NCBI RefSeq assembly: GCF_023055435.1
Contig: NW_025964001.1
Location: 44,516,001-44,580,000, forward strand
Source: Haliotis rufescens
Taxonomy: Eukaryota
Direction of reading: 5' to 3'
Length of the DNA stretch: 64,000 nt
The position numbers and the translations under genes were made by a program. The notes below the pieces were generated by a model. The model saw nothing but the letters and a program-made list of their open reading frames with translations. It was not told the origin of the DNA and searched no databases. Positions 15,547 through 49,175 of this stretch are shown one piece after another; positions within the stretch are counted from its first letter, which is position 1, and the number at the start of each line of letters is the position of its first letter.

Positions 15547-15739
15547 TTTCTGTGCATGTAGCAGGATCTGTGAACCAACAACAGCTGTCAAACTGGAAAA
15601 CAAAATCAACAGTCTTTTCTTCAAAAGTACATGACACCCCACAAAGAAACACTTGTTGCAATATTACAGTTCCACACATCACAGTATGACCTCTTTTATG
15701 CATCTAACTCTACTTCTGTGTCACTTCACTGGGGGCTAC

Positions 15740-16040: not shown

Positions 16041-16241
16041 TGTTGACGTCCCTATCGTTGTTGGTGTCGTTTCTAGGACGATGTGGTTCTTGGTGTTCAT
16101 CTTATAGACGATGTATCCTACCACCAGAGACTTTCAGCTGTCCGTTTTCAACAGTGTCAAACAACATTTCATGCAGCTTCAAACATTCTCTGATGACTTA
16201 TCACTCATGATATAACATTGCTGTAATTCCTACTTTCACAT

Positions 16242-16592
16242 GACCGTCTTCGTGGTGTAGTGGTAGAGCGTCCGCCCGGAGAGCGGAAGGTCCGGGGTTT
16301 GATCCCCGGCCGCGTCATACCAAAAGACGTTAAAAGACGTTACTTGTTGTTACCCTGTCTGGCGCTCGGCATTAAGGGGCCAAAACAAGGACTGGTCGGC
16401 TCGGAGTCAGTATACTGTGTCTGAGTGGGATATTCATGTAAAACTGCGGCATGATATGTCAGTGAGCTAGCACTATAAATCGGCATCAGTCCGGACTAGT
16501 ACAAGCAGCCACACACAAACACGTGCATGCACGTCGCTATATAAGTGCAATAATCTTGGACGCGACGTTGAACCCCATTTCACCTCACCTCA
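16242..16592 (+). mobile_element. tRNA-derived SINE, family 2
   Basis: tRNA-like head GGTGTAGTGGTAGAGCG..GTTTGATCCCC, (CACCT)n tail and TSD CCTACTTTCAC. Copies at 48879-49297 (+) and 57425-57662 (-). Confidence 0.85.
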
Positions 16593-17194
16593 CCTACTTT
16601 CACCTAGCTTCTTGTCGGAGAGTATTTCACGCGTATCGTCAACACACCTGCACTTGGCTACAACAACACCAGGGTATTTTAGTGTCCAGATACCTTCCTC
16701 TCAAAGAAGCGACAATTCCTCTCCGCAGACTCGACCTGTATGTCTGTCTGTTTCAGCCCTTCCCTGAATCAAACTGTTTACCTTACCACACACAGCCTAA
16801 AAATTGGTTTCGTGAATATTTCTGATCACAATATGTTCAATAGTACAATGTACAGTAGATGGTATCACTTTTGATGTTAATCCTTTGAACAAAGTATTTT
16901 ACATGGACACACTGTAAAACTTTGCCGTAAAATATACGGTAACATAACGTGAAAATGCAACGGTAGGATTCTGTTATGACACTTGTACGCCGGAATGCCG
17001 TGAACGACAAATATTTTACGGCGTTTCACTGCACCAAACGAAGTTTACGCGACGCTACCGTTTGGCCCCAAGGCATTGTGGGATACTGCCATCCACGCTG
17101 CCGCCATTTCACGTTGACCTGAGAAGAATCGTTCCAGAATCTGATGTCACAAGACTCATCTGTTGGTAATTTGTACACATTCGATGTCTAGAGT

Positions 17195-19969: not shown

Positions 19970-19984
19970 CTGTCAACGCTGACA

Positions 19985-22912
19985 ATGGCCAGTGGGATTT
20001 CTGAGGATGAGAAATGTCTCAAGAGACATGTACTTGATCTTATTGGTAACCTGGATGAGGACACTTTGAACAGTATTGTTGATGTTCTGAATACCTTAGG
20101 CGTCACACATGTGGATGACCTGAAGTGGGTGACACCGGATGATCTGGTAGGGAGAGTCAAACCTGTTCATGCAAGGAAGCTACTTAGCCATTCAGTGTGT
20201 GAGTAGTATTATATTTATTTCATAGCTAATGCACATTCACCCAATTTAATGTTTCGTCTTTCAGCTTCTTATGGTAAAAAGGGGGCACGGGTGGCCCAGT
20301 CATCTAAGGCGCCGCGATTCGCTGTGCAGAGTTGCGTCCCTTGGGCACGCCAGAAACCTATGATTGTGGGTTCGAATCCCGGTTCACCCCGATTATGTTT
20401 CTAGGTTTGTCAGCACCATACCCGTGCTCGTGGGTTTCAACGGGCTTTCCTCCCACATTAAGCTGACATGCCGCGATATAACTGGAATACTGTTAAAAGC
20501 GGCGTTAAACCCAACTCACTCACTCACTCTTATGGTAAAAATGGTTATTCTTGAAAGTTGTTGAAGCTGAGTACATAGTGTTACATGTCATTACAGTTTG
20601 TTGTGTTGTTGTCTGCCCTTCCACTAATAATTACATACCATGTAAGACATGGCTATTGGAAAACAAAATACAGTTCTAAGTCATTATGTATGATAAGGTC
20701 ACAAAAAAACTTTTGTGGCTGCTGTCAAAAATAGGGTAGCTGTGTAGGCAGTTTTGTTTTAATACAATTGTGGAAGGGGGTGGAGTGTATCTTAACCTGA
20801 AGCAAGTAATTTTTAATTGTATTGATTCTCCTTCAGAAATGTTATGTAAATGCTAATAAAAAAGTTAGGGTAGTCACATATATTTGGGGTAGGTCAAGTA
20901 ATTGGAATCACAACTATTTTTGCTAAGCCTTAAGGGTTATATGTTTGCATAATTCTCAGTATGATACTACTAAATTTGTCCATTTAAAAATAGTCTGTAA
21001 TTTCAGCACAACCATCAAGAAGTGTCCCCTCACCTTCATCCAGTGTGGATTCATCCATGTCATTCTCACCGAAGAGTCCGGGTCCAATATTGATACACAA
21101 CATAAACACTGATCCCAACTGGCCTGTCAAATTAGAACTCCCATTGAGAGATGTTAGTGCTGCTGTGAGAAATGATTTGGAAAGGGGGAAGAGACTACAT
21201 CCAAGTGCCAGACAGGACCTTGTCAGATTGTTTGTTGATGCAGTCAGGAAGAAGACTCAACATGCATCGAGACCCCAAATGTCTGTCATCGCCCAGAGGA
21301 TGACTGCACGGTATCCTGATAGTCTACAGGATAAACTGGATGGGTCTATAATCGGTTCGGGATATGACAGTATTCTAAATAAACTTGTCTCCAGGAACGA
21401 AAACCTAAACAGATCACTGAATGCAAGTAGGATGTGTCTTTCTCGCAAGAAGAGACCACTTGCTAGTGATTCAGGTTCCAGTGATAACTCAGATAATCCT
21501 GAAGGTGGTTGTGCTGCTGCAGCAGCTGAACGACGAGACTCTTATGGCTGCATCAACTGGATGCCAGTTCTCACAGGGGACACCGAATGCCAGGATATGG
21601 AACATCACAAGAATAATTTAAAGGCAATGTATGAGAATTCAGAAACAGATTATGAGAAGGTATCACGCTCCATGAAAGCTAGTTATGCTCTACAGCGCAA
21701 AGAGATTAATAGTGGAACTTCGATGGATGAACTGAAGGAAGAGTGGCCTTATCTGTTTGAGGTCAAGGGTCTTTTGGCTCATGCTAATGAGCTTTTGGGA
21801 ATAGACATAAGGAACGCCTTAGGAACTGCTTATAGAGACAAAGCGGTGAGAATAAATAGATTCTTCAAAACTAAATCCAGTTTCAAGTGTGAGATGATCT
21901 ACGAGGAAGCCAGAAGGCAGAGTGAGAAGGATAATGTCAAGGCTTGGTTGGTCGCAGTGATTCTGTGTGTTCTGAACCATTTTGGTGAAAAGGAAAAGGA
22001 TGTCTTCTTTGTTGTTGATGTAAGATGTATGTTTAATACTACAATTACCATCACAAATCGTTCAAACTTGATTTCAAGATGAAAAGTTTAAACTTGACTT
22101 GACATCTATTCATTGCTAATGTTTCTCTAATGTCTTCAGTTTCAGTATGAGACTATAACATTTCTGAAAAACATGCTGTTTCTTGAATATCATACAGACA
22201 GAATATTATATTTTTCACCATCTGTTGGAACAGGAAACAACAAGTGTTGGAGCAGCAGAGAAGTCCACAACAAAGGAATCACTACAGCTGATAGTTTTTG
22301 GTAAATGTTTTACTCAGTCATTCAAATGTAATATTGGGCTCTCTTGGTGCTATTTTGTTTTCTAGAACATACTTGCACAGCAGAACAGTTTTTCATACAT
22401 ACTGTAACAGTCTTGCTAAATCTTATTGAAATTTAGTAGTAACATTATAAGTTTCACTGTGAATAGTTACGGATGGTTATATAATGTATTTTAGATTATC
22501 AGACACTAACTTCAGAATACATCACTATCCAGTCAGTTTATAATAGAATAGTATTCTTCACCCACTATATCTTTTACTTTTTGTTCCAATAAACAGGTGA
22601 TTCAGTCCTTGCAGGCAAGACATACATGTTGATGTGTGACAGAATGGTCATTTCACCCATGGACAGAATCCAAAGTTTCATGGACGCCTTCTCTGCATTC
22701 TTTGCATCGTTCTATGTGTTTAATCTGGAGTATCCCCCTGGGGCTTCAACAACCATGGAGTTTATTCAGAGGTATTCCACATTCATTCAGGCTTTTTTGT
22801 ACTCAGAAGTTATGTGAGAAAGTTTGCTCAACTACAAATTGATTATGTCAGATTTTTTGTTTTGGATAACACTTTCTTAGTAAAGTACAGTTTCTTGTAA
22901 AAGAATTTAGCT

Positions 22913-29147: not shown

Positions 29148-32100
29148 CTATTGGAAGACTAGAAGGGGCATCATCATGGCAATAACGGTAGTCATCAGTG
29201 GAGTGTTGACAACGTTCACGGACCCGTTGGCTGCAATTAAAAATATAATATTGAAAATTTATAATGCAAACAAAACAAAACATTACCACAACATGGTATA
29301 AAGACTTTATACATGATACGTATTAACTGCGTGTATTTATTTAATAAAGTGTACAAATACTATCAAGGCAAATAGAAAACTGAATGATTATACGGCTTCT
29401 TTTTCAATGGATTACTGTTGTTTTTCGTTTAAAGCCGCGCTCAACAATATTCCCTTGCCCCTTATACACGCAGCCCAGACAGCGAATGGGACTTCTCACA
29501 GAAGGCACTGCAAAGTCAAACCCACCCAGAACTTTTCGGAGAACTGGGTACTAGGGATGCAAGTGTGACAATTCGAAAGCGAGGTCCAAAACCTTTTCCG
29601 GAATCTTGTCAATGACATTTGTGTCTAAAGGGACAGAAAATTGGTTGATCAGGGGTTTTTTTCTAAGCCTAACAAACAAATCCAACAACTGCGAAAGTGC
29701 TTTTAGTTTTACTTATGAACATAATTTTCTCTGCTTTTCAATTCACTTCTCATATCGATAGTGAAGCTTTTCAACTCCAGCCAGGAAGAAAGAAGTTTTC
29801 TGTAGCCACCCTGAAAAAGCCTATTCACTGCAGCTTTGAGGTCATCGTTATCGTCATAGTGCTTTCCACGAAGCTGTTCTTTCAGTTTAGGAAACAGGGG
29901 GAAATCACTTGGTGCCAGGTCTGGCGAGTATGGAACCCATGCTGTTGCACAGCAGCCTTTGTAGGTCGAGAGGAGTGAGGCATTGTCATGCAAAAATAGA
30001 ACTCCAACAGTCAGCATTCCTCGCAGCTTTTCTTTGATGAACTCTCTCAGGCAATAAAGCTTATCAGCATAGTAGGGACCGGTAATCATCTTTTGACTTT
30101 TTCGGTATTCAACGAGGATCAAACCCTTTGCATCCCAGAATACAGTGGTCATTACTTGCTTCACTGTTCTTGTAGACTTTGGTGCCGGAGAAGTGGCATG
30201 GTGCCATTCACTGGATTGACGTTTTGACAGCGGCATCATGGTGGTAGGCATATATTTCATCACCCGTTACTAATCTCCTTTTCTATTTGACGAAATCCTC
30301 CACCCACAACTTTTCCTTAAGATTGTAATTTAAAAACTTTGGTACTCAACGAGCAGATATCTTATTCATCTGTAGATTTTCATGAATAATAGTTTCAGTG
30401 GGTCCATTCCTTAGACATGTGCATTCCTCAAGTTCAGCAATGGTAATACGTCTATCTGACAGTATACGTTTTCTATATCCTTGATTGATGTTAGTTGAGG
30501 GTCGTCCAGACCTAGGGTCATATCAAGGCCTGTTCGCTCGACCTTAAACATAGCTGCCCAACTTGTAACAGTGGAATAGCTGGGGAAAAACGTATCCCCT
30601 CTACACTTGTGACATGCGGTCATGGATTTCTTGGGGTGTACGTTTCTCTAAGATAAAAAAACTTCATGACTGCTCGGTAAACGTTCTTTGCTATTGCTGA
30701 GTCCATTTGGACCCCTATCGCGTTGAAGTGGCTGTCATTAATATACAAACGGCCTCAACAGACCGAATATACTTGCAATGCACTACTCAAACAGTGTACT
30801 ACATTGATTAGTTTACTGTGTTATGGCCCATAGTGGAAAGTTAGTCAGAGTTAGAACCTTTTGATCAGCCCTCGTATCGTTGGTGATACATTTTAACTTA
30901 TCATCTTCTGTTATGTGATTTCTTAAGCAACCTTGTGACTCAAAGACCTCATGGTCGGGTAATGTTCTTCTTCTGTTATGGATGGGGGAACAATGTCTGA
31001 ACCCCATGACAGGTAAATGCGCGTAATGCACATGTTGACATATATGACGATAATGATGAAGAACTGACAGATCAAAGACAACAGGTCACTATGTCATTAA
31101 GAAATGACTTCAATGTTTTTGCAGACTTTGCGTAAATCCCCAATAAACGATGTTTTATTGAAATCAATTCATATAAACAGGCCATAACGACAAATATTGC
31201 CACAAAAACTGTGAGAACAAAACGAAGTCGGTGACATCAGATTATTAGCCAATCAGGAAACAGTAGTCCGCAAGTGGGCGTGGCCTTTTCGACTTCTGGG
31301 GAACAAAAACGTACAATACATTGCTTGATTAACCAATCAGATGGCATAGAATCACTTGCAATTTATTTATTGATTAATATCCTATAACATGGGCGTACCT
31401 ACCTGGTTCACAGGCTGACTGTCCGAAGTACGGGGGACAGGCTGAAAAAGTGCACGTGTTTGAAGACAGTATGTACAGGAATAAGATATAACTAATTGCA
31501 TGTTAAGAATTATTCTCACTCATTTCATTTCACTCCGCAGTGAATAACACAAATTAATGTATCGTTTTCCCAAATATATTTTACCCCAAAAAATTAATGC
31601 GAACCTGAAATCCATAAAATATAATCAACAAAGGTAGTGACTTTAATATAATTGTACAATATAGTTAACGAGAACGTGTTATTAAATCGATTATATTTTT
31701 CTTGCTCTTTGACTGAGCCGGGGTCTTACTGACGGATATTATAACGCGCGCTGCAAGTGGAACCTGTATTCAGTGATTGCAAGTTGCTTATGTTACCATT
31801 TTTCTGTGACGTCAGAAGGAATGCTGCAGGGTTTATACACAACATCTGTAGGATGGTATTGGCTCGGGACTGTAGCCGTGGAGACAAGGTCTGGCGGCGG
31901 CTCCACACAGTGGATCTGGCAGATACACACTCGCTGTTGTTCATCTTCAAGCATCCGTACATGACAGCATAGCTGCTGTAATCTGTGTCAACGACCCAGT
32001 ATGGATACTGATCTGAAATGACAACATCAGCTCAATTGGTCACACAATATCCTTCGATAAGAATAAGGTGTAGGATTAAGGTACGGTTGGACAGGTTTCG

Positions 32101-35100
32101 CCTAGACATAATCGACATTCCTCGATCATAGTACACATTCTGCCACCTAGCGTCTTGACATAACAAGATTCCTAAAACGAAAAGACTATAGTGTTGATAT
32201 TGTTATAATATCTAGCTTAAGAGAGGCATCTGTTTAGATTTCATTTTGTCTGTTTAATGAAATAGATGAGGCTCCCCATACAGTATGTTGGTGGTTGTTC
32301 TAATACAATACTAAATACATACCATCACTGTTGCCTTTCACTTTGAGGGTAAACTTCCCCGGGGTTTCTGACTGTTCCATTATGGCCTCCCTGTAGAAAC
32401 AGCCTTGCTTGTTCCTTACAAAGAGAGCTATATCTATTGAATCTCGTCTTGGTGTATACAAGAGAATATTTCCTGAAGCTACGTAGTGTATTTATTCTGG
32501 TATTCAGGTTAGAAGTAACATTGCAGTAAGATTCAGGGCAACATCTCCAGTGGTACACGACTCATACCTTCCTCTGATGAAGGCGGACACTTGCCCGTCA
32601 CTTCCCACAACGTACTCGTGTTGATAGTCTTGGAAAAGTTCAGACGGTGGAATGTAGGACTGAGCCAACCATCTCATTTCATACCAGCTCCCAGAGTACT
32701 GTCAACAGTCAGCAGGGTCAGATGTATTGTCAGTACAATCACGAAAGAACAGCATTTTGAAATATATTGCATGGGAAAATAAAGATATGAACTATTTAAA
32801 CCCTGGTCGTCCTGCGTTTTCGTAGAAACGCATCTCTTAATTGATAAAATAAATTGGATAATGTGAATGTGATGTCAACTGTTATACATATTGTCATCAA
32901 ACACTACCACCAGCCTACTGATGTTCAGGGGTAGCTGAAAATGTGGCCTGACTATGTGGAACTGAGTGAATGGACTTGGTTGCTAATTATTTGCATAATT
33001 CTTCCCAGACAAATCTTTCTTCCCGCACTGCAAACACGAAAACGTCGTTTTTTTCCGTATATGGTCATTGGACGGAAAAACGACTAAAAATTCATTAAAA
33101 TTGATTAATTGGTCAGCGTCTAGAAAGTGTCCAGAAAAGGGTCGAGTTTTTCAAGCGTAAAATGGACGGAAAAACGATGCTTTTTACTCCGCCTTGTACA
33201 ACTGTTAACGGCCAATCAGCTTCCAATCGGAAGCTTTAGGTTTCGTATTTCTGGCATGCCTTGCTCTTGTATCTGTCGCGCGCAGTGCAGCGAGATTTGC
33301 TGATAAGCTAGTTTTAGGATATGTTACATGTTAATGGAATTCAGACACGCGCCAAGAAGTCAAACCAAACAATGTTACTAAGTTTATTGTGGTAACGGCT
33401 ATGTACAGTTACCCCTATCGGATAATGGGTTGTGTTTCATTTGGTTATAACAATAACTAATTTTTAAATGTGAAGTTTACAAGATATACGACTTGGACGA
33501 GAGGTCGGTCACATGACGTTCTTCACGTGACTGTATTCTTGAAAAGGCGTAAACACTGACTACTTCCACATTCCTTGGGAAAACCCTTGGAATTCCCTGG
33601 TACGAATTCATACAGAAGCGTGGTTGCAAGCCCATTTAAGGATACCCTCGCTGCAACCCATCCCAGAGAGAAAAAACACGAAAAAAAATCCAAACTGTCG
33701 CAGTGACAATTTACAGAAATCTATGAATTTACCTTAGTATCTATTTGACACATCTTCACAATCACCTTTCAATGATCGGCCAATTGATCAGTGATGCCAA
33801 AGGCTTGAAATAGCCACAGGTTAATTAACAACTTCGAAAATATCTCCCGTCACGTTTATCGTGTCGGCCATTTTGACGTATTGTACTTGATGTAAATGTA
33901 TTACGACGCTCTGTCATTGTAATTGACTTACTGAGGTAATTCTGTAAAAGATCTTCTCATCTAATGAGGATATTGTTTGGAATATATTTCTTGTAAACAT
34001 ACTAAAACATATGTTCCTCGCTTTGGGGGAACTATTTTATTCCGGGGTGGCCCGTTAAATCTAGTAGTAGGTCAAGGCACCATGCGTGATCTGTTATTTT
34101 ATGTGTTTAAATTACGATTTGGGGCGTTAATAAAATACACTGACGCAAGTATATTCTATTTAAATCAATTGGATAATTGAATATGCTTTCTTTTACATAT
34201 TACATAACATCACTGCACAAAATATGAACAGTTGCAGTAACACACTACGGTAATCGCATTAAACATCATTTTCAACTGTACAGTATTTCAGTTATATCAT
34301 GGTGTATCAGACTGATGTGGGATAAAAATCCGAAGTGGTTCAAGTCCTCCAATGGTGAGCGTATCCTGCCACACAAGTGGCACCCGTCACAAAACATGCA
34401 TGGACAAGTCAATTGTTCACCTGAACAAAGCACGGAAACACACAATGATGCCCGTCCTCAGTTTTACCGAGCATGTAAATTATTTTGTCCGTCAAAAACA
34501 TGGACGAGTATAAACAATATGTTCATTCACGTAATACATGTCATACATTTGACAAAATGTATTGACTCGGAGCACTTTTGTTAATCACAGCGTATGCAGT
34601 TGAACTCATCACCCATCCCATTATTGATAACCCTTCTTGAAGATCTATGAAATCAGAAGCTGCAACACTCTATCTTTTAACTGGCATGTCAGACTTCTAT
34701 TTCATTACTCAGTTTTATTTGCACGGATTACTATGGAAGGGACATTGTCCCGTTGTCGCATTGTCGCATTGACGCCTTTACAAAAACAAGCAAAACGTGT
34801 CAAAATTAACAAAAGCGCGACAATTGGCCATTTGTTGCATTGTCGCGTGTTCGCATTGTCGCTCTTTGATAATCCTTTTCTTTATTTTACAAAAGGGCGA
34901 CGATGCCATAACGCGACATTTTCAAGGTCAAAATATGTCTCGTTGTCGCATTGTCGCCCCAACACAAATGTGTATAAAAGGCGTAAAGTTCAGTTATTGT
35001 TACAGTTAGGAAGTTCAATCTGATAAATGTACGTCTTGAAATGAAAACACAAGTCCGTCCGCGAGTCCATAACGTTTTATTGTGAGCTCTTCTCTAAAAG

Positions 35101-38100
35101 TGCTTAGTGTTCAACTCCCAGTTCCAAACACGTAGTACCTCCTCAATAATCCACATACCTCCAGTGCAGTGGTCTTCCGGAAGATCTTACTCTCGACCGT
35201 ATTATACAACTGACGAGTGCACGCCTGACCTGTGACCTCGTTGCAACCCTCGTGATGTGTTTGCCGAAGGGAGAGGTGTAGGAAATGTGTGCTCCAGCCC
35301 AGCGCAGAGCTCGCGACACACTGTATACTGATTTATACTGTATACAGTATATTGCAGTTGATATACTGTATACTGCATGTGATACTTATTTGCGGACATG
35401 TTACGACTTTCAAGATTCAAGATTCAATTTGCATATATTTCATATACAACAGACCGCCGTCATATATCACTGGAATACTGCTGAGAGCGGCGTTAAAACA
35501 AATTGTTTTCATAATGGAGCGCTGCATTTAAAATAGAACCGTATACATATGTACATGTAGTACCAACTCACTCTATTTGTTTCGAATATTCAGCAGAAAA
35601 TATATTATTAACCAGGTCTTTGGGAAAAGATATCAGATTTTTATAAGCAGCCACATAGGGATGATAAAGGACCCCTCGCTGATTAGGTTCTTGTTTACTT
35701 AAGAGCAGAGTTGGCCATGTTAGATGATATAACCAAAATCCAGGCGCTCCGGAGGGGGGCAAGCTGGTCTTGTTAGTGTATGGTATGAGCTGTGACGTTG
35801 ACCCAAGAGAATAATGTAAAACATGAGACCAACTCAAGTCTATAATGATTGGGAAAGTCTAGATTTCCACAGCTCTAGCCTGAAATTAAGAATTGTTCTA
35901 TGCTCCATTTTAATTGTATTATTTTCATTTTGTAGACATGGATGGACCAATCAGGAAAGAAATTGATGGAATATTAATATTACATATTACCACTGATCCA
36001 GTTAAATTCATCACACAATAATAAATTAGTATTTGACATTACGGCATTTGGTTATTAGGGCATGATCATGTACATGTTCACTGTAGTAATGTACACACCA
36101 GTCAACTTGATTATAATTTTTATCAAAGTGTAGCGCGGCATCAACGATTACTTTATGATATCCTCACTTGTCATCGATGTATTGACATCGAACAATGGAC
36201 GGGAATTCGAAATTCTTATGGATAGCTTCAATAGGGACAGCGCCGGTGTCAGTACAAATTTCCTAGTTAAAATAAGTATCTACAAAATATAACCTGAAGC
36301 AGACAAGAACAATATTGTTTTATTAATGCTTAATTTCATGGATAGAATTAAGGCAATCTAGGCTTGCCAAATCGTTCTAGACTTGAGCTGGATTCCTTTT
36401 AAATTTATTCTGTATGGTCTGGGAGACGAACGGGCGTCAGTATCGCATGGAGAACTGGGACAGCCTTAATCAGTGTAATCGGATATGTTGTGGAGTTTCG
36501 GTTTTGGGCTGTTTGCTGAATATATAGAGTTGCGAGTTATGTATACTCTGTATTCTTTCGTCATGGTAGCATATATATTTTCTATGTTGCTTTTTGAATT
36601 ATCCACAAATAATGAGAACTACAATGTAAACCTCTCTCTGGAGATATGCAATAATACTACTGAAGGGCATATCTAAAAAATGGGACTTCTCGACAAATAT
36701 TTCTTTCTTAAATACTACCCGTTACAGGTATTCTGATCATTATATCATACTTTGTACAGTTTAAAAGTCAAATAATGGCAAATTGTGTATCTTTCTACAT
36801 TTTGAATTAATTATATTTTCTGAAATAAAACCTTAGCATCAGATAGTGATATACACGAATATGATCTATACTATTATAAATGAATTATCAATTTTGTATT
36901 ATGAATTAGATAAACAGAAATATGATAGTAAAACAAATTATTTTAATCTATTCTTGTGAGTAGGTAACGAGAGATCTAGGCAACGCACTAACGTAGCCAT
37001 TTATGAAAAATGAAATATTAAAAGTTTAGGGGTTTGAACATGCACATTGAATGACAGGGAAGAAAGCAACGCAATAATTAAATTATGAATCAAATTATGT
37101 TATAAATATAACAGAATATTTAGAAAATATAAGTTTAATTTCTCATTGTTGGAAGGTGTTTAATAATTATATAGATTTTGTTTGATTGTTTGTTGTTTAA
37201 CGCCGCACTCAGCAATATACCATATTTGGGATACGATGACATGCATCAACCAAGTCAGCGAGCCAAGTCGCCTTCGTAGAGGCATGGGTTGTTGAATGCC
37301 TATTCTAACCCGGATCTTCACGGGTATTTTTTTAAATAATAAGGTACAATGAAATTCTGTATATGTCCATAATAAGTGTGTATAAGTAGATGGATAATAT
37401 GTCCATACACGCCAAGTAAATGGTATATGCATTAATTTAAATGCAAATGATTCAATGATGAGTTCTTTCACAAGTCCATATTTCAAGGCATGTATTTGAT
37501 ATTCATAATAACTCCACAAAAGCTACACAATGGCAACAAAACGGTACCAGCATCACAGATACCAATAATACATGAGATACATATAATTACTTTAAAGTTA
37601 AAACATGTATCTAAATAGAAAATTAGAAGGATACACTTCCGACATTTTTCGTACTTTGTTTTCGTTTGGAGAGAGAAGTTGTGATTGGTATCTGATGGGT
37701 GCAAACAGGTGTTCCCTTCCGCCCAGGCCTTCCGGCAATGCTATAGCCCAAAATGAAACAAGCCTTGTTCAACAGGTTCAGACTCAAATTTCTATCCCAC
37801 TTGGGCTCCTTTTAAATTTAAATATAATTTCTCGTGTCGATATGTGTCAGAAGAAATGAAATATTACAGCACTGGTAAATAGGTTATATGCGCATGTCAG
37901 CGTCGATCCTATAATATCCTTTTATGCAAAATACATATATACTGATGAATTAAGGTAGTAATACTACGCAAATGTATGTCCAGATGCATACATCAGTATC
38001 ATCTCGTGATCTTAATTCGTGCTTTGAGCCCTTTTTCTACCGGAGATTCTGGGTTGTTACATCACACCAGAAAGCCAGGTCTAAATTCAAGTCATAATTT

Positions 38101-41100
38101 CATGGTCCGTCTTGTATGTTGGAAACCAATATCGCAATATGGCTAAATATTGCTGAACGTGGTATTAACCCGATTACTCACATAATTATTCCATTTTCTA
38201 CAGTCATCTACGAACACTATCTTTAAGGAGGTATATCTGTATCATCCAAATGTCCATACATATATGTCCACATTTATATGTATAAAGCAAGTCGTCCTGC
38301 ACTCTTCCTTAAAAGATAAATGTTAAGCATTTCCTCTGTATGGATTTATATAATGTAATATCGTTTTAATGTAATGCTGATGCAGTAAACGTACCACAGA
38401 CCTAATGCTAGAATAACATCTAATTTCTGAAATGAACATATTTTACAGAAAAAAACAGTTGTTTAAACAATACTTATAAAATATAAGAACAAGGAGCCAA
38501 GAGCCAAATATTGGGATGTGTTGGACATATTTGTTTCGGGGTCTTACGACAGACAAACCTGATGCCTTTAAGTATAAAGATAAGTAAGTATAGATGTTGT
38601 ACATATTCAAATATGTTCGTGATTAACCCAAACTTGAAAAATATTGAAAGATGAGTGGTAACTATTTATGCCATTATTTCAAATTAGAATGAGAGCACAT
38701 CAGGAAAGCATGGTACTTTAATATACGTATCTTGTTAACCCAATATTCTTTTTTAAGTAAGAGCAGCATGTATATCGAGAGTATAGGTTTGGTGCGTGAC
38801 ATCACACAGTACTTTCAGAAAGTGTGCATATTCTGTTTATCGGCAATAAATAACATAAGACGATTCATACGGGTAAATACGATTTACTTCAGAACTAGTA
38901 TAGATTATTTAAGCTTAGGGGGAAATGTATGTAATTAACAGAACTTTGGCCGGGTTTGAAGGATTTGGGTCCTGGCTTGGGCTTTGTGTTGGACGTGTAG
39001 ACGGCATTTCCAGGTTTGACGTATCAATGACAAAAATGATGTCAGATGCAATTCTCTGCCTTTTCGGGTGAACAATTGGCTTGCCTTTGGATGTGTTTGT
39101 GGCGGGTGCAACTAGTGGATCGGAATGAGCTCGCGTTTTTGCGAGCATCCAATGTCATCATTTATTATGATGAATCATGAAACATGCTCCTGATGTTGTC
39201 GCAATGGTGCAGTTGGCGCTACTTTTGGCAAGGGTTTCTCATGATAATGGAAATGCTTATGTCGCTTTTGTTGACCGATAAACATGAAAAGATATAATGT
39301 TAGTGTATATGGTCATGTTATTAAGAAACAAACGACGAATGGGAGTTGTTTATTGTACGATAAACAACGACCGAGACTCATTTAATTCTATATGAGATAT
39401 CAACATTACTTACAGCCTCTTTCAGGGTGTTAAATTAGGAAAAAATACACGCTTTACAATATTTACCCGTACTTAAATAATGATGATTCCTTGAATAGAA
39501 TCCGACAGCGGCCATGCTAGATAAATCCATTTTAGGATTTGAGTTTGGTCCCGCATATTCTCACAATTTTCTCGTCAATCATCTGTACCTTTCCTCCCAA
39601 TACCGATTGTCATATCACTCTCATTTTCGGATTCTCCAGCAACATTTATTGGGAACAACTCACTAGACACATGCCTCTCAAAAATAAGGTCAAATTTACA
39701 AATTTTACTTTTCAAGTTGCGAGTGCATGTTCGAATCTCAATAAATGACGTCATGATAGAACAATGTTTTATCGTGAAATAAATATCGCTTCCTTCTTTG
39801 TTCTTTGTGATTTATCGTGTAGCTATCTTATATCATCAAATGCCAATTTCTAATAATTTTTTGCTTTATCATGACGTATCCGTGTCATGTAGCAATAACA
39901 TACACAAATATCGTTGACTTCGACGTTGAATAGTGTCATGAAATATGATTATCCTCTTGTGTGCAATATTTCTGGTTGATAAATCTAACGTATTCTTACT
40001 TTAAGAATAGCGACTATACATGATTATATATCCCTTATCAGGTCTCTGTAACATTTGCAAAATGATACAAATATAAAAATACAACTGAACCTAAATGTAA
40101 TGTTTTAATATCCTTACTTTGCTGAGTGCAGCATTTAACAACAAACAAACAAAACATAATATCTTTAAGAATTATGTTAACAATTCCGATGCTAAAAATA
40201 ATCTCACAATCTCCATACCTCTTTCTCTCTATGAAAACATAATAACTTTTTTTTTAATAATCTGAAGGAATAATAATGGCAATACTATCATAATTATCAT
40301 CATTATTTATGTTACTTATCCTCAAGTGAAGTAGTCCTCCACACTATACATTCAGTGAAGAAGCCCATGAACATATGAACTATGTAACATACATTCATGG
40401 AAATTAGATGAACAGTTGAAGTTAGCAAATGATATTATTCGGTCGAACGTCTATCAGCCATCTATTCTATTCATGAACAACATTTCACGTGGGACCAACA
40501 GAGGGAATTATGACTAACGACTTGCTAATTATTTTTTATATTCATGCCAGCTCAAACGATCTATTGGCTTGATTTATTGTTATGGTATCCACAAAATAAG
40601 TAGGATCCGATTTTTTCCGTTTTTGTTGAAATAAAACTGAATTATATTTGCTGTTTACATATCAAAGTTTGCCAAATTGTTACAAAATGTTTGCCCACAG
40701 CAAGGCTACATATCCCCAACATATTGTGCTAGGCACAGTATCACTGGACTGAGGGAGGGCGGTATTCCTCCTTGTGGGTCAACTGCTTGGCAATATAGGA
40801 CGGGAAAACTGCAGGGGGTGAGGGCAGTTAAGTTGATGGTACAGACAGATAAGAGAGATCATTTTACAAATGTGAAACCTCAGTCCACAAAGGAAGAGGC
40901 GAAAGCTGAAACTTGGTGAGGTTTACAGAACAAAGGCAGTTATTTCTAGTTTCTTACTGACTCTCGAAGATACATNNNNNNNNNNNNNNNNNNNNNNNNN
41001 NNNNNNNNNNNNNNNNNNNNNNNNNNNNNNNNNNNNNNNNNNNNNNNNNNNNNNNNNNNNNNNNNNNNNNNNNNNNNNNNNNNNNNNNNNNNNNNNNNNN

Positions 41101-43652
41101 NNNNNNNNNNNNNNNNNNNNNNNNNNNNNNNNNGTACACCATAAAAATGGCTACGTATGTAGTTGGGGTAGATATGTTGAATGCCCGGCCAGTATGACCT
41201 TTGAGTCACTACAGTTGCAGTCATTAAAATGCGTAAAACAGTATTTGAGTGAAAGAAAACACTATAAGTGAGTGAAACAAAAGACCTCAGTACAGGCACA
41301 ACCAGTCCCCCAACCCCAAGTCTGCATGTATCAATACTCATACCTGCCACATCCTCAACCACTTAACTTACTCACACAATCATCTGACAACATGTTCGCC
41401 AACCCTCGTATCACAACGCATGCACGCATGCACGCATGCACGCATGATCGCACGCACACACACACACACACACACACATCACATTCTTCTTTCCCTACCA
41501 TTATGTCTACGTCAGCCATCATGGATCCATGCGCATGCTTTCATACATAATCCATCCTCCCACCATTCCCCAACATCCATCGAACTATAACTATATCCGC
41601 CCTCATGTATCGGTATTCGTGCTTTCATACATACATACACCCTCCCTACCATTCCCCTACATCCATCGCAGTATAACTATGACTATAACCGCCTTCGTGC
41701 ATCCGCACTTATGTTCACATTGCATTGCATATGCATCGAATTACACGTCTAAAATATCGTAAATATTTTACATGTACATATTATATATCAGCAAACAGAG
41801 ATTATTATAACGCAATAGATTTCATCCGTCAAAACATCACAGAAAGAGGGGCAGCCTGGAATTTTACAATGGCATCTGAATGCACAAAGACGTTCAACTG
41901 GTCAGGAGGTGAGAGTTGCGGAAGATTACGGTAAACTTCAGTTACAGATCTCCATTACGAATAAGTATGAATAAAGATCACAGCTTGCTATGACGTGTAC
42001 TTCATGCCTGCAGAATTAGCAATGTCCTTAGCTCTAAATTGTATATCCAAATGCTTATGTAGACAAAGACCCAAATGTATATAGGCATGACCATATTAAA
42101 TTCTACGCAAATATCACCACATTTAAAAACAAAGCTAGATTGAGTCTTTGAGGGGCATTAAGAACTGATACACACTAGGAAAAATATTCATGGATGTCAA
42201 CGGAGGAACACTGCGTTTCGGAATATATACTTTCTCCTTCATCAGGTGCATATTATTAAATGCTATGAGGCAGAGAACATATATTTGTACCTGTAAGAAC
42301 AACAAAAGTAAAAAGATAGCAAAGAAGGGAACGCAACAAGGGAAGCCAACAGATGGCATGGCGCTGATTACCCCGCCTCCCGTTTGCCCATTGTCCATTT
42401 CCCATTACCAATCATTCATAAGTTAAGTTTTGGCTTTAATTTGTCCATTGATAATCAACCATCAACGTCTATTATCTCCACCCTAAAAATATGTAGTTTA
42501 CTGAGAGAGTGGTATCCAAATATAATGTGTGTTACTGTTGACCACTTTCTTAAAGGCATTGTTGGTTCAAAGCTTTCGGTCATAGAAGCCGTGCCATTTT
42601 TCTCTTGTCAGAGGAGTACACAAAGTATACGTCATCTGGACTAACATTTTTGGTTCGGTGGCTGGGTTAGATCGCCAACTTTGTGTTCTGGCGATTGGGT
42701 GCCTCACTCACAGTGTGGGTTCAAATCCAGGACGGGGCTCAACCCAAGAAAGTACGAGAATCTGTACTTTACTCAGAAAGTGTTATCCCAATTATAACAT
42801 CTGTTGTCAAGAAAACACAATAAATGTATATTCGGCTTTGGATGGGTAATGATATCACAGACATATACGGATATTGATGATGACTTGGAGGAGCTTCGTA
42901 ACGCACGTCTTCTCAATTCAGGGATTGGTAAATCCAAATATGTGTGTGCGCGTGCGTGCGTGCGTAAATGTGGGCCTGTTGGATGTTACATAAAACATTC
43001 ATCTTGAGCGGGATGGTAGTTCGAGTTGGATTAGCATGTTAACTATATGATCTTCTTTAGGCAGAGAATGCCGCGCATGAATGTATTGATGAAATTCCTA
43101 GGTACATGGGGACTTTTCGTCCCCAGGAATACCCACAGTGGAGACTTCAAGGGGGATAGGGTGTACACAATGTGCTACCTGGTAGATTGTGTGTCATCAG
43201 ACCGGACAACGTTGGTTTTTGACTGATTGTGGCGAAAACACACTTATTCATTTACTTATATCGGAAATTGAATGTTCATCTTAATTGTTATTGTTGAACA
43301 TGTAATATATTTTTAAAGAAATAAAACAGTGACATAATAACCACAACTTTATGTGAGCGCGAGTAGCTTTTTGGAATGAGATGAATAAGTCTTATAAAGT
43401 TGTAAGCTTCTTCACAACCGTGTAACTATGAATTGACTTTATTGGGTAATCAAAAAAGAGATAGGACCTAAAATAGCCAAATTTCATACGATTTCACTTG
43501 TCCACCATCTTGGATGCAAGGCGAAAACATTTCAGCGCGGTTGAAGCCACTGAGAATGCCCCCTGCAGAGTTGGACGAACATTCTGCGGTGGCGCGGCTG
43601 AGTTGACCAGAGGATATCAGCAGTATTTCCTGTCCAAGTTATTTAGGTCAGT

Positions 43653-43704
<52 letters not shown>

Positions 43705-46700
43705 TGCGTGCGTGCGTGCGCGCGTTTGCGTGCGTGTGTGTGTGCGCGTTTGCGTGCGTGCGTGTGGGGGGTGGGGGCGGGTGAGATTAGGGGAATAGAT
43801 GATAGATTTAGCAACAAGTAAGGTCATCTTGAGTTGGAGGGTATTCGCAGATGGATTAGCATATGAACTATAATTCTCTTTAAGCAGAAAATGAGGATCC
43901 ACGATGTTCGACCTGGTAGAAGTGTGTTATCAAACCTCACAGCATTGGTTTTTTGACTGACTGTAGCGTCAAAACAAACTCATTCATTAACTTGAACTGA
44001 ATGTTCATCTTAATTGTTATGGATAGTCACGGAGCCATGATCCAGAGAACAGGGTGTCATTAGATAGAATTAAACTAAGTAATAATAGGATTACAAGAAA
44101 AACGGGGTTTTACAAACAAGCCAATAAACTTCGCTCATTAACACCAGAGTAAGTCAGTACAAGATTGAAAACTGCCCCATAATTATGTATGACATGCTTG
44201 TCGGGTATTGTTACATATATATGTGAAAACAAAGTTATTAAAATGAAGAGCAAAACTGATGAAAGTTAACAATAAACGTGTATACGTGTTATATCGTCAC
44301 TGCAAAAATAATGATTGTTTGTCTTTAGTATTAACATTCAAATACGTTATATCTGTATTAGCGATATTGTCTTTGTTCCACCGGTGAGTCAGCGTTAGCC
44401 GTACTATCTCGTAGTATAATTGAATTTCTGAAGACATCACGATACAGTTTTTACGATGCATCACGTCTGCACTACCGCTTGATAACAGCCTTGTGTTTGG
44501 GAGTTTCAGTGGTTTACATCGCTGCTCTTGATATTGTTGATTAAACTTGATACTATGAACAATATAATGTTATGTGAGAGGTTGACTTTAGAACGGTAAC
44601 ATACTAATAGTATATAGGATGACATAAACAGAACAATGAGAAGTTCGTCGAGATTAGTGTATAGGCAACATTTAATAATTAAAATAATTACATTCAACAA
44701 CTCCCCTTTTAAGTCCATTTTCCTGACTTATAAGTAAATGCAAGAACAATCGGCCGGAATACAATGTATAGTTCTTGTCCACTTCCATATGACTATATAG
44801 CATACAATAAGCTATCGGGTCCCGTTTAGATCGGTTTGGGTGGCAGCCTAGATGGCCATAGAATAGTTTCATCTTGGAATCTCCCATATCACTGGGAATC
44901 CTTTTCAATTTAAATGGAGTTACTCGTTACGATTCCGAACCTTCACGTGACTGTGTTTATGAACCATTGTCAAATAGTGGTGACATTAAATCTAGGAAAC
45001 AAAATGCGAAATCGCGCATGCACAGAACGGAAAATTTGGTCAAGGCATTAAGTAATCCGCATGCGCAGAACGATTGATTTCAGTACTTCCGCTAAGCGCT
45101 TCGAGTGCAGCGTCGAACGCGGGCCTGTAATCTAACACGCGGGGACTGACCAATGAAATCTGAGAAGTAGAAATACCGGTAGACGCTGTTGCTTGATTGA
45201 CAATGTCAATCAAGAAAGGGAGGAGCTTAACGCTATCGTTCTCTCCCAGTAAATTCCGATGTCAAAAAACGACGTTATTTGGACGGAAAAACGATGGTTT
45301 GAAAACGTCCAAATAACGTCGTTTTTCTGTCGAATGACCATATACGGAAAAAAACGACGTTTTCGTGTTTGCAGTGCCGTCTGATGGTGCTAAAACAGGT
45401 GAATACGGAAGATGGTGTTCAATGTTATAAAGCCACAGTCATACACTGCGGCCATGGCGACAACAGACTTGTGTACAAGTGCATTGTCCTGGTGGAACAA
45501 CACACACACACATGTATAGTGAGTTTCCCACGAGGTTTAGCATTGGTATTCTCACGCAATTGCCTAAGCAGATTAGCATTACTTTGGCCATTACTAGTCA
45601 GACCTGTCGGGAGGTAGTCTAAAAGTAGGATTCTAACGGAATCATATTATCTTCTCAGCCGAGAGAACAAACTTAGCCTTCTTCTTCAGAGGAGGAGACG
45701 TTATATACGGTATATTTGAGTATTGTATTGTTCAGTCTCAGGCTGATAGTGGTGAAGCCACGCCACATTCATGTTTACAAATTGGTAACATAATTAGCTC
45801 AGTCTGCTTCAAAGCTTCAAATGACGCTGAAACTCTTGTCAGGCGCAGAACATTCCTCAGAACCCCCCACCCCCGCCCCCCAACACACATATCTCTTTCT
45901 CTCTCGCTCTATCGCTCATGATAGATGCCTACTGCATTATTTTGTATCAACGTTTTCCTTAGGGGTTGCAGTTTAATGTCTTCCTGATCTTAAATCACAT
46001 TAGGGGCTCTCTCTCCCCCTCTGGAACTCCGCTGCCCACCCCTTAACAGTAGCAAAGGAAGCATCATCATCATCATACGGATAGCTGTTTGAGGTAGCCC
46101 TTTCATATAGAGATACATTTATGAGAGCATGGTAGCCAATTTGTCCATTTTTTTATCAACAGAGAAGGCCTAGTCCCTTTGATGCGTGCAGACATATGCT
46201 GGATTTTGTTCAAATGCAGCCTGTAAGCATGGCGAGTATGATACGTACTATGTGCAAACTGTTAAGGGTGTAGTCTACGTCCTTTGCAGTTAGCCTAAGA
46301 ATTTTCCGGCAACCCCTCATATAAATCACAAATACTTAACGTTCCCAACAAATACATAGGCAGGTAATAAGTATCCACTGAGTGTACGATGTTATTCGTC
46401 GTGTATTTACTTTCCTTGTTTTCTGTCATGACACTGGCCGATTTTGTAAAAGATGTTATCCCAAATTTCTTTGCCATGTACCTTGGCTATGTCGAAGTCT
46501 TGTTGTATTTGAAATGTTGAAACATTGCAGTTTTGACCCTCTGTTGTCCTGTACTGCGCTGGTATATCACATTCTAGAGGATATATAAATAAACATTTAT
46601 GACTTCACGTCTACAACCTATTGATTGTGACTTAATGTGGGCCTACATTGCTTACGCTTTAATGGAAGATTACACGTTACACAATGTAAACATGTTACCT

Positions 46701-49175
46701 TTAACCAAACTATGCAGTTGCTTTTCAGATGATATGAGTGAGTGAGTTTTACGCCGCTTTAGACATATGTCAGCAATATCACGGCGGGGGACACCAGAAA
46801 TTGGCTTTACACATTGTACCCATGTACATTTTCGGCGTGACGAGAGAACGCTTTAACCACCAGGCTACCCGGCCGCCCCTCAGACGAAATGAATGTAAAT
46901 ACACATTCATTTATAAAAACATGTAAGAAAAGATACATACGTTTATACAAAATAGTATTACAAACATATGAACAATATAACACGCGTTCTGTAAACGGTA
47001 AAAGAAAAAAGAAAAGCATGACCACTTCAGTAATAGCTGATGTAAACTCACGAACCCAAGAAATTAATACCTGAACGTGATAAACTGTATCCAAATCTTA
47101 CCCTTGTCCTGTTTAGTATCCAGGAAGGAGGTCTCATTAAGGCAGGTCCTGTTGAAGAACGAAGGGGCTCGATCCATTACAATCTGAGGAATGATCTTGG
47201 TGCGACTCCAGATCCATGCCCGGGGTTGAGTACATGTGCGGGTGGAGGATACATTTGAGCAGGCGTACACAAAGGCGTACTGGGTGTAGTCTGTTTCTAA
47301 CACCCAGTAGGACATTGCATCTTTTAAATCAAAAGGAAAATACAAACATGTATTCAGATTTGCAGTGTGGTAAAACGTACTGACATTATTACTAAACACA
47401 GAAGCAATAACCGAGGTTCGGTTTAATACGCTTTTTGAAGATACTTTTGGTAATGGACCCAACACTAACATTTAGTGTCAAATTAATAACCTAATATTGA
47501 TATGTTCGTGTTAACAGGAGGTTATCACTGACTTAATGCGTGAGTGAGTATGGTTTTACGCCGCTTTTAGCAATATTCCAGCAATATCACGGCGGGGGAC
47601 ACCAGAAATGGGCTTCACACATTGTACCCATGTCGGGAATCGAACCCGGGTCTTCGGCGTGACGAGCGAACGCTTTAACCACTAGGCTACCCGACCGCCC
47701 CTATCACTGACTTAAGTCACGGTGGGTGAGTGAGTTGAATCACTGAATTTGTGTGCTGGCGATTAGGTGCCTCACTCTGTGGGTGTGGCTTCGAATGCCG
47801 GATGGGATTCATCCCAAATATAAGTACAAGAATGTGTACTTTACAAAGTAAGTGTCATCCTTACTATAAGATTTGTTAAACTTGACAATTTTATAAAAGG
47901 CATTGTGTGTTCCTATCACTGACCTGATGGGGTGTCTTGCCAGATAAACCTCCCAGGCACTGTAGTCGGGATGAGTTCCCGGTGGTAAAAGAAACACTCC
48001 CCGTCAGGCTTCGATGGATCACTGTGTAGGGGAAAGATAGTATACACAAAGCAATAAGACATGGTGGGAACAAGAACAGTAAGGTGCCAGTTTTATGCCA
48101 GAATCATCTGCTACAGGAATTGACACAACTAAGCATGGCACATTCGTTAGCAAAATGTTCCCAAACGTCAGAAAAACACAACCCCAAGTAGGAGAAGGAG
48201 AGAGAAATCTTCTAAAATAGTTAACTATTTTTATTGTGAACTGAGGAGGCAATAAACCTATACCTATACCTATATCAGTTGATTTTATCATTTGTTTGAT
48301 TTTCAATTGAAAATGTCTTAAGTTAGTGATATTATAACAAAACAATGCGCTGTACTAGCGCTCTGTCAGCACCAAAAGAATACTTTTGTATTTTATTTTA
48401 AATAATTTGTTTTAAAACTTTAAAAAAAATAAAAATAAAAACAATTGGCCTCATGTCAAGAAAAGCTGACTCGTAAGCGATGATACGGAAATACGCGAGT
48501 CTACTGATTGGTACTTTATAAACTGTTATTGGCTTGGTCTTCGATATTCCGATCAGACATGTCATGGAAAATGTTTCCAAGTTGCCATAAAATCACATTT
48601 CTAATACAATGGGTAAATGCCTGAGATCCCTCACGTAAACAAAGAAACCGTATACATCTTAGAATCTCACTCTAATCTGATACTCACCGCCCACTGATGT
48701 AGTTGGTGATATTTTTGTCATCGGTAGGAATGTAATAGTGGTAGTAGTCTGCATACCTTTCCTCTTCCGGTATGAACGATTGGGCATACCATTTATACTC
48801 GTACCATTTCCCCATATACTGCGAAGGAAACGAGGTATGTGTGAAGTAGCATTACCAGAGACATAATTCATCAGCAAAACCCACCTCCGTGGTCTTGTGG
48901 ATAGAGCGTCCGCTCGGAAGGTCCGGAGTTCGATCCCCGTCAGGGTCATACCAAAATAAGTTAAAAGATGATACTTACTGTTAACTGTCTGACGCTCGGC
49001 ATTATGGGGCTAAAACAAGGACTGGTCGGTTCGGGACTCTATACTAGGTATACTATGTCTATGTGGGGTATGTATGTAAAACTGCGGTGTGGTATCTCAG
49101 TGGGCTAGCACTATAATACTGGCATTAATCCGGACTAGTACAAGCAGCCACACACACGCACACGCACACACACGC

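What the first reader, a model, noticed from the sequence alone, without database searches (positions are those of the whole stretch)
33026..45376. 12.35-kb cargo-carrying CACTG transposon (Pack-CACTA-like) hidden in a lipocalin intron
Seen: 44-bp perfect TIRs beginning CACTG, a 3-bp CCG TSD, subterminal GGACGGAAAAACGA repeats, no transposase-like ORF, and exon-like segments with canonical splice sites on both strands. Known: CACT(A/G) termini with a 3-bp TSD define CACTA elements, and gene-capturing non-autonomous CACTAs are described mainly in plants. Inference: this is an animal gene-shuttling element. Perfect TIRs and an intact TSD around decayed, SINE-laden contents suggest an old cargo package that moved comparatively recently.
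Basis: partly seen in the sequence, partly recalled or inferred. Interest (0 to 1): 0.85.

Follow-up and report, generated by a model that had tools for sequence, protein, structure and literature searches.

The report
Ordinary non-autonomous CACTA-like transposon copy
The 12.35-kb insertion is real, but it is one young copy of a roughly 400-copy, non-coding "cut-and-paste" transposon family of this abalone genome, and I found no sign that it carries captured host genes.

Summary
There are perfect 44-bp inverted ends starting CACTG, a CCG duplication on both sides, subterminal GGACGGAAAAACGA motifs and no transposase.

The interpretation does not hold. The same 44-mer occurs 812 times in this genome, 462 of them perfect. 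Perfect ends pair up 10.7-13.7 kb apart. Three other full copies are homologous to the window copy along its interior. One sibling is about 99.6% identical over 11.7 kb and has a different 3-bp duplication (TAG). So the "cargo" is the family's own interior, and it is not old or decayed.

No open frame of 48 aa or more has a credible Pfam hit, and none shows coding constraint between subfamilies. Contigs from public runs show no splicing.

The assembly gap hides nothing large. Two uninterrupted copies have only 136 and about 190 bp between its flanks.

The ends and the 3-bp duplications fit the CACTA/EnSpm (CMC) kind. The genome holds active Tnp2-type transposases. One of them, a 917-aa ORF in a 25.8-kb element with about 28 copies, lies next to a nested fragment of this family. 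No element with this family's ends on both sides encodes a transposase, so the partner is unidentified.

Other first-stage notes (s1-816388, s1-811282) seem to describe further copies on other DNA; I did not check them.

The parts
33023..33025 (.). Left copy of the 3-bp target-site duplication (CCG)
   Evidence: Four full copies each have their own matching 3-bp duplication: CCG, TTA, ATT and TAG.
33026..33069 (+). Left terminal inverted repeat, 44 bp, starts CACTG
   Evidence: The same 44-mer occurs 812 times in the genome at up to 3 mismatches and 462 times perfectly; the control pattern gives 0.
33070..33177 (+). Left subterminal region with two perfect GGACGGAAAAACGA motifs (33070-33083 and 33164-33177). 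These are presumed protein-binding sites.
   Evidence: The binding role is inferred by analogy with CACTA subterminal repeats.
33178..40975 (+). Left interior of the family, non-coding. The full left stretch 33026-40975 is 99.7-100% identical to sibling C112 and 80-97% to copy c1. Relative to most copies, 36 bp are missing at element position 194.
   Evidence: No coding signal.
40976..41133 (.). Assembly gap (158 N), left unfilled. Its flanks are collinear in other copies, 136 and about 190 bp apart.
41134..45332 (+). Right arm of the family, non-coding. It is 95-99% identical to other copies. The same arm with its TIR also sits nested inside the 25.8-kb Tnp2-bearing element B. It contains motif copies at 45281-45294 (+) and 45319-45332 (-, 2 mismatches), an old internal duplication (about 42999-43291 versus 43824-44020), and simple repeats at 41416-41483 and 43653-43766.
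45333..45376 (-). Right terminal inverted repeat, 44 bp, a perfect complement of the left one
45377..45379 (.). Right copy of the 3-bp target-site duplication (CCG)
32507..32701 (-). Context: the lipocalin exon with the GxW motif of the neighbouring minus-strand gene, 324 bp from the insertion
47067..47471 (-). Context: the last recognisable exon (TDY motif) of the second, upstream lipocalin gene on the minus strand

Best explanation
The element is one recent insertion of a large (median about 12.2 kb), non-coding, non-autonomous DNA transposon family. The family has about 390 copies in this abalone genome.

Its build is that of the CACTA/EnSpm branch of the CMC superfamily: CACTG termini, 44-60-bp inverted ends, short subterminal motif repeats and a 3-bp target duplication.

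It moves by cut-and-paste using a DDE transposase supplied in trans. That enzyme would recognise the conserved ends and the subterminal motifs, excise the whole 12 kb and reinsert it with a 3-bp staggered cut. The target shows a mild T-N-A / AT-rich preference.

Shown here: the ends, the duplications, the family, its youth and the lack of coding capacity.

Inferred: the superfamily, and supply of the enzyme in trans.

The supplying element was not identified. The genome has several intact Tnp2-type (Transposase_21) ORFs. One of them, 917 aa long, sits in a 25.8-kb element (B) with about 28 copies, immediately next to a nested fragment of this family.
For: Ends and TSD in the window.

Copy number and size:
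- 812 termini, 462 of them perfect, control 0.
- 30 perfect pairs lie 10,696-13,671 bp apart, median 12.16 kb.

Interior shared with other copies:
- Interior homology to copies c1 and c2.
- At least 40 genomic matches at 96-100% for each of two interior probes.
- All 30 sampled left ends and all 12 'unpaired' ends are family sequence, two of the latter being the arm nested in B.
- The sibling at C112 is 12,113 bp with TSD TAG and 41 mismatches in 11,752 aligned bases.

Target sites: matching 3-bp duplications in 4 of 4 full copies. Of 44 flanks, TTA occurs 11 times, TAA 5, TCA 5, and the rest are mixed.

No coding capacity:
- Pfam on 82 ORF pieces gives nothing better than E 0.03.
- The synonymous/non-synonymous scan over 163 + 98 frames has a smallest p of 0.019, not significant after multiple testing.
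- tblastn with two CMC-type transposases of this genome is negative.

Tnp2 transposases with CACTG-type ends and a 3-bp TSD exist in the same genome.
Against: - No transposase-bearing element with this family's TIRs at both ends was found, so the superfamily call rests on structure alone.
- The only physical link to a transposase is a family arm nested inside element B. B has different termini and different subterminal motifs. In the tree that arm sits inside the family's diversity, so it looks like a passenger insertion.
- The T-N-A bias of the duplications recalls PIF/Harbinger.
- Only 54 of the 812 termini were inspected: 42 single ends plus both ends of six full elements (the window copy, c1, c2, the sibling and the two B copies).
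- Very short exons, under about 25 codons, would escape my coding tests.
Confidence: 0.85

Rival explanations
1. Pack-CACTA-like gene shuttle. The interior consists of captured host gene fragments or genes that the element carries around.
For: - The interior is large (12 kb) and lacks a transposase.
- Captures that happened at the birth of the family and have since decayed cannot be excluded, because the top-40 limit of the genome search hides any single parental locus behind hundreds of family copies.
Against: - The interior is shared by the whole family and is 96-100% identical between copies, so nothing is specific to this copy.
- No credible Pfam domain in any stretch of 48 aa or more.
- No coding constraint.
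- Contigs of four public runs lie collinear with the DNA, with no GT..AG joints in the two runs guessed to be RNA.
Confidence: 0.06
2. Autonomous element with a cryptic transposase gene that is split into many short exons or is too divergent to recognise.
For: - Pfam also misses the clearly transposase-like 924-aa ORF at 17195-19966, so a Pfam blank is weak evidence.
- About 390 young copies with perfect ends need an active enzyme, and none with matching ends was found.
Against: - No frame shows an excess of synonymous change between subfamilies 6-16% apart.
- tblastn with both CMC-type transposases of this genome finds nothing in four copies.
- There is no ORF over 130 aa in the window copy, and the other copies differ in where their ORFs lie.
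Confidence: 0.04
3. Non-autonomous PIF/Harbinger-type element, the other superfamily with 3-bp duplications, mobilised by a Harbinger transposase plus a Myb-like partner.
For: The 3-bp duplications are biased towards T at the first position and A at the third. TTA plus TAA make up 16 of 44.
Against: - Most duplications are not TWA. Examples are CCG, TAG, CGA, TGT, CCA and TCA.
- The termini read CACTG, and there are subterminal motif repeats as in CACTA elements.
- No DDE_Tnp_4 or Myb relic lies inside.
- A Tnp2 element of the same genome shows the same CACTG + 3-bp pattern.
Confidence: 0.05

Closest known systems
Non-autonomous CACTA / En-Spm elements (the dSpm/I type in maize; EnSpm-N entries in animal repeat libraries), CMC superfamily
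   Same: - CACT(A/G) termini, inverted ends, subterminal short repeats and a 3-bp target duplication.
- No transposase of its own, and many near-identical copies.
- Tnp2-type transposases are present elsewhere in the same genome.
   Different: - It is much larger than typical deletion derivatives: 12 kb of non-coding DNA.
- Its interior shows no detectable relic of a transposase gene.
- The TIR is 44-60 bp, against the 13-28 bp I recall as usual.
- No autonomous element with the same ends was found.
Pack-CACTA / Pack-MULE gene-capturing transposons of plants (from my own knowledge of the literature)
   Same: A non-autonomous TIR element with a long interior that does not derive from a transposase.
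   Different: The defining feature is recognisable host gene fragments with parental loci, and none was found here. The interior is one conserved family sequence, whereas Pack elements carry differing cargos.
Animal CACTA-superfamily elements such as SmTRC1 of Schistosoma (PMC1636069)
   Same: Animal hosts, and a Tnp2-family transposase lineage that this genome also has.
   Different: SmTRC1-type elements make 2-bp duplications. This family makes 3-bp duplications and carries no transposase.
Element B of this genome (25.8 kb, about 28 copies, 917-aa Tnp2 ORF)
   Same: - A CAC-type terminus and a 3-bp duplication (CTA/CTA in one copy).
- Recent activity.
- It contains 4.3 kb that are 95-96% identical to this family's right arm, including the terminal repeat.
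   Different: - Its own ends (CACAAGACC... / CACTGGACAAAA...) and its subterminal motifs (CATTCCAA type) differ.
- The shared arm is internal to B, and in the tree it sits inside the family's diversity. It therefore looks like a nested family fragment and not a common origin.

Membership tests
CACTA/EnSpm (CMC superfamily) | Termini read 5'-CACT(A/G)...(T/C)AGTG-3' | tested here: met
   CACTG at 33026 and CAGTG at 45376. The same holds at all 54 termini of other copies that I inspected.
CACTA/EnSpm (CMC superfamily) | 3-bp target-site duplication | tested here: met
   CCG/CCG here; TTA, ATT and TAG in three other full copies.
CACTA/EnSpm (CMC superfamily) | Repeated short motifs in the subterminal regions, in both orientations | tested here: met
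   GGACGGAAAAACGA twice at the left end and twice at the right end, one of them inverted. There are five hits in the window, one of them unrelated, against 0.36 expected. The array is modest: four sites.
CACTA/EnSpm (CMC superfamily) | Encodes a Tnp2/Transposase_21 DDE transposase, or shares its ends with an element that does | tested here: not met
   - None inside.
- No other family shares the first 16 nt of the terminus.
- Three other Tnp2 loci have no family TIR within 10 kb upstream.
- The one linked Tnp2 ORF lies in element B, which has different ends.
- Only a sample of the termini was inspected, so the partner may still exist.
Pack-type gene-capturing transposon | The interior is made of host gene fragments (exons and introns) with an identifiable parental locus | tested here: not met
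   No credible Pfam match in 82 stretches, no coding constraint and no splice joints in the laid contigs. The search for a parental locus was limited by the top-40 listing.
Pack-type gene-capturing transposon | Different copies carry different cargos between the same ends | tested here: not met
   All copies examined share one collinear interior, with two subfamilies of the right arm.
PIF/Harbinger | Duplication is TWA (TAA or TTA) | tested here: not met
   Only 16 of 44 flanks are TTA or TAA. The window copy has CCG.
MITE pair / assembly artefact | Each end belongs to its own short element, or the halves are wrongly joined across the gap | tested here: not met
   There are only two TIR copies in the window. 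Uninterrupted copies of 12,113 and 10,696 bp are collinear with both halves across the gap.

The most novel reading that the evidence does not exclude
The 12-kb family and the 25.8-kb element B form one system. In this reading the 917-aa Tnp2 transposase of B is the enzyme that moves the 12-kb family.

The family arm that sits directly upstream of that ORF has its terminal repeat, CCAAT/NRF1-like promoter motifs near the end, and a 3' splice site just before the ATG. It would serve as the gene's promoter, first exon and intron. B would then be an autonomous giant element that has co-opted the end of its own parasite, or the reverse.

A further possibility is that 12 kb of conserved non-coding interior is kept because it is needed in cis or makes a non-coding RNA.
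Probability: 0.15. Interest if true: 0.5.

Novelty: new member of a known kind. Interest (0 to 1): 0.25.

Why it matters
Mainly as a correction. Several first-stage notes in this genome describe "cargo-laden CACTG transposons". These are most likely copies of one abundant non-coding family and should not be counted as gene-capture events.

For abalone genomics the family matters for three reasons:
- It makes up about 0.35% of the genome (about 390 copies of 12 kb).
- It is very young. More than half of the ends are perfect, and one sibling pair differs by 0.35%.
- It inserts next to genes, here 324 bp from a lipocalin exon. It is therefore a likely source of structural polymorphism and of assembly breaks.

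The unidentified transposase source and the family fragment nested beside a Tnp2 gene in a 25.8-kb element are modest open questions for transposon specialists.

Tried and rejected
- Pfam on all stop-free stretches of 48 aa or more in the element gave nothing credible. This is weak on its own, because Pfam also misses the 924-aa transposase-like ORF next door.
- tblastn of that ORF, its 345-aa neighbour and the 917-aa Tnp2 ORF against four family copies gave nothing.
- The codon-position scan between diverged copies gave no significant frame.
- Rfam and tRNA scans found nothing inside the element.
- Search for an empty allele: the left flank is unique in the assembly. The contigs laid over the right junction did not bridge it, so presence/absence polymorphism stays untested.
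- RNA evidence: no listed run is on record as RNA. The two runs guessed to be RNA cover the element evenly, do not cover the unique flank and show no splice joints, so they may be DNA.
- Hunt for a partner sharing the terminus: only one hit, a family copy with a deletion.
- All 12 'unpaired' perfect ends were family sequence; two of them (L039, L046) turned out to be the arm nested in B.
- Three other Tnp2 loci and the relatives of the 924-aa ORF show no link to the family's ends.
- The first exon of the neighbouring lipocalin gene was not found by comparison with its paralogue.
- Literature search for abalone CACTA/EnSpm families found nothing specific.
Full report
**Observation.**
- The element runs from 33026 to 45376 (12,351 bp).
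- Its first and last 44 bases are perfect reverse complements starting CACTG. Complementarity continues to 60 nt at 97%.
- CCG lies immediately outside both ends.
- The terminal 22-mer occurs nowhere else in the window, with 0 expected by chance, so these are not two separate small elements.
- GGACGGAAAAACGA occurs twice near the left end and twice near the right end, once inverted with two mismatches. With one unrelated hit at 52140 that makes five hits in the window against 0.36 expected.
- There is no long open frame.

**The gap.** 40976-41133 is 158 N. I did not fill it.
- I used other copies only for the distance between the sequences that flank it. In the sibling copy at C112, which has no N, the flanks are collinear and 136 bp apart. 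In copy c2 they are about 190 bp apart.
- The two halves therefore belong to one element, and the gap cannot hide a gene.
- The window's own sequence has simple repeats right beside the gap (41416-41483). That is a common cause of assembly breaks (inference).
- I make no use of those letters for the gap.

**It is a family copy, not a unique package.**
- The genome is 1.33 Gb.
- The 44-mer occurs 404 + 408 times at up to three mismatches and 236 + 226 times perfectly. The reversed control gives 0.
- Among the first 100 perfect ends, 30 form convergent pairs 10,696-13,671 bp apart, median 12.16 kb. The window copy has a typical length.
- Two full copies fetched at random are homologous to the window copy through nearly all of its interior at 80-97% identity: c1 with TSD TTA and c2 with TSD ATT.
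- Interior probes 37900-39400 and 41790-43330 each give 40 or more genomic matches at 96-100%.
- All 30 sampled left ends and all 12 perfect ends that lacked a visible partner are family sequence; two of the latter (L039, L046) proved to be the arm nested in element B.
- The closest sibling (C112, 12,113 bp, TSD TAG) differs by 41 mismatches in 11,752 aligned bases, about 0.35%.
- The interior is therefore neither specific to this copy nor old and decayed. The whole element is young.
- Subtracting the roughly 28 nested ends described below, (812 - 28) / 2 gives about 390 copies, or about 4.7 Mb.
- Runs labelled with five different organism codes hold 37-59% of the sampled words of the right arm. 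Near-identical copies therefore occur beyond the sequenced individual.

**Content of the interior.**
- None of 82 stop-free stretches of 48 aa or more has a credible Pfam match; the best E is 0.03.
- Pfam also misses the transposase-like 924-aa ORF at 17195-19966, so I added two independent tests.
- First, tblastn with that ORF and with the genome's 917-aa Tnp2 ORF finds nothing in four family copies.
- Second, I scanned all frames of 25 codons or more for an excess of synonymous differences between the window copy and copies 6-16% diverged. The smallest p is 0.019 among 261 tests, which is not significant.
- Contigs of four public runs lie collinear on 41134-45376. The only joints come from the large DNA-type runs and look like indel variants between copies. 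The two runs guessed to be RNA show none, and they do not cover the unique flank, so they may be DNA.
- I therefore see no evidence of exons.
- Only two short stretches match other dispersed repeats in the window, so "SINE-laden" is an overstatement.

**Who moves it?**
- Transposase_21 (Tnp2, the CACTA transposase family) hits 49 places in the genome. About 25 of them are one intact 917-aa ORF with Transposase_21 at 46 bits, a weak DUF4218 match and a C2H2 finger.
- Three of these hits lay 5.3 kb from "unpaired" family ends, which led to element B.
- B is 25,797 bp long. About 28 copies are roughly 99% identical, with different flanks.
- B has imperfect ends, CACAAGACC... and CACTGGACAAAA.... 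Both ends carry CATTCCAA-type subterminal motifs. One copy has a CTA/CTA duplication.
- Inside B, directly upstream of the ORF, lies the family's right arm: the terminal repeat plus 4.3 kb, 95-96% identical to the window copy. It ends at the point that corresponds to the window's gap.
- In a tree of 13 right arms, B's arm falls inside the window copy's own subfamily. That clade has 100/100 support and B's arm is sister to an ordinary family copy (midpoint root). So B most likely picked up a family copy that was later truncated, and B is not the family's ancestor.
- B's ends and motifs differ from the family's, so B is not an obvious partner.
- No other family shares the first 16 nt of the terminus.
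- Three other Tnp2 loci have no family end within 10 kb upstream.
- The relatives of the 924-aa ORF are few and unlinked to the family's ends.
- The partner remains unidentified.

**Classification.**
- CACTG ends, a 3-bp duplication (four of four copies) and subterminal repeats are the structural hallmarks of CACTA/EnSpm (CMC) elements. That is my own knowledge of the family. Animal members have been known since 2006 (PMC1636069, though those make 2-bp duplications).
- The fourth hallmark, a Tnp2 transposase inside or in an element with the same ends, was tested and not met. I therefore say that it works like, and is built like, a non-autonomous CACTA element. Membership stays probable, not proven.
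- The duplications are biased to T-N-A: of 44, TTA occurs 11 times, TAA 5 and TCA 5. Most are not TWA, which argues against PIF/Harbinger.
- The defining features of Pack-type elements are host gene fragments and differing cargos, and neither is met.

**Genomic context.**
- Two tandem lipocalin genes lie on the minus strand. Their exons are at 32507-32701 and 31729-32031, and at 48687-48851 and 47067-47471.
- The element sits between them, 324 bp upstream of the GxW exon of the first gene. It is inserted into an old mariner-like relic.
- Whether this is that gene's first intron or its promoter region depends on an exon I could not find.

**Mechanism.**
- Shown: conserved ends, a 3-bp staggered-cut footprint at independent sites, and recent amplification of an intact 12-kb unit.
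- Inferred: a DDE transposase made elsewhere binds the ends and subterminal motifs, excises the element and reinserts it.
- The perfect conservation of the ends is notable: 57% of the 44-mers are perfect, while the two right-arm subfamilies differ by 8-16%. This fits selection for transposition competence in several master lineages (inference).

**Verdict.** This is a real, well-described insertion, but an ordinary one: a new member of a known kind. Other first-stage notes in this genome (s1-816388, s1-811282) appear to describe further copies on other DNA; I did not check them.

Noticed in passing
L058+L056+L039+L052+L053 (C1:57418322-57444118); second copy in L054-L059, L064, L066 (C35): Giant CACTA-like element B. 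It is 25,797 bp long with about 28 copies at about 99% identity. It has imperfect TIRs, a 3-bp TSD (CTA/CTA in one copy, AAT/ATT in the other) and a single intact 917-aa Tnp2 ORF 1.37 kb from its right end. A 4.3-kb fragment of the 12-kb family is nested just upstream of that ORF. The left 17 kb has no long ORF.
   Followed up: partly
window 16910-22082: An intact 924-aa ORF (17195-19966, +) has no Pfam hit but is distantly similar to the 917-aa Tnp2 ORF (20% identity over 397 aa, E 4e-7). A possible element start, CACTGTAAAAC, lies at 16910, and a 345-aa ORF lies at 21045-22082. There is only one near-identical second copy in the genome (C68:16189131). I did not find the right end of this element.
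   Followed up: partly
window 31729-32701 and 47067-48851, minus strand: Two tandem lipocalin genes, with GxW and TDY exons recognisable in each. Their first exons were not located.
   Followed up: partly
window 45377-46000 (-) and 29712-30263 (-): Mariner-type transposase relics. The 12-kb element is inserted into the first one (..FHQDNALVH..). The second matches Pfam Transposase_1 (E 8e-16).
   Followed up: no
window 14932-15642 (-): A 237-aa ORF with a TLDc domain (Pfam E 1e-13).
   Followed up: no
window 46734-46933, 47625-47696 (-), 16240-16320: tRNA-derived SINE-like repeats. The first has enormous depth in all four public runs, with loose ends that read like a tRNA T-arm. The second reaches the Rfam tRNA threshold (30.1 bits).
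   Followed up: no
G000:C2:24366765, 24373584, 24380989: Three perfect family TIRs in the same orientation, 6.8-7.4 kb apart. This may be a tandem or rearranged array of partial copies.
   Followed up: no
window 42999-43291 vs 43824-44020: An old internal duplication (80-96% identity, offset 730-825 bp) inside the family's right arm. It is also visible in other copies and in B's nested arm.
   Followed up: no
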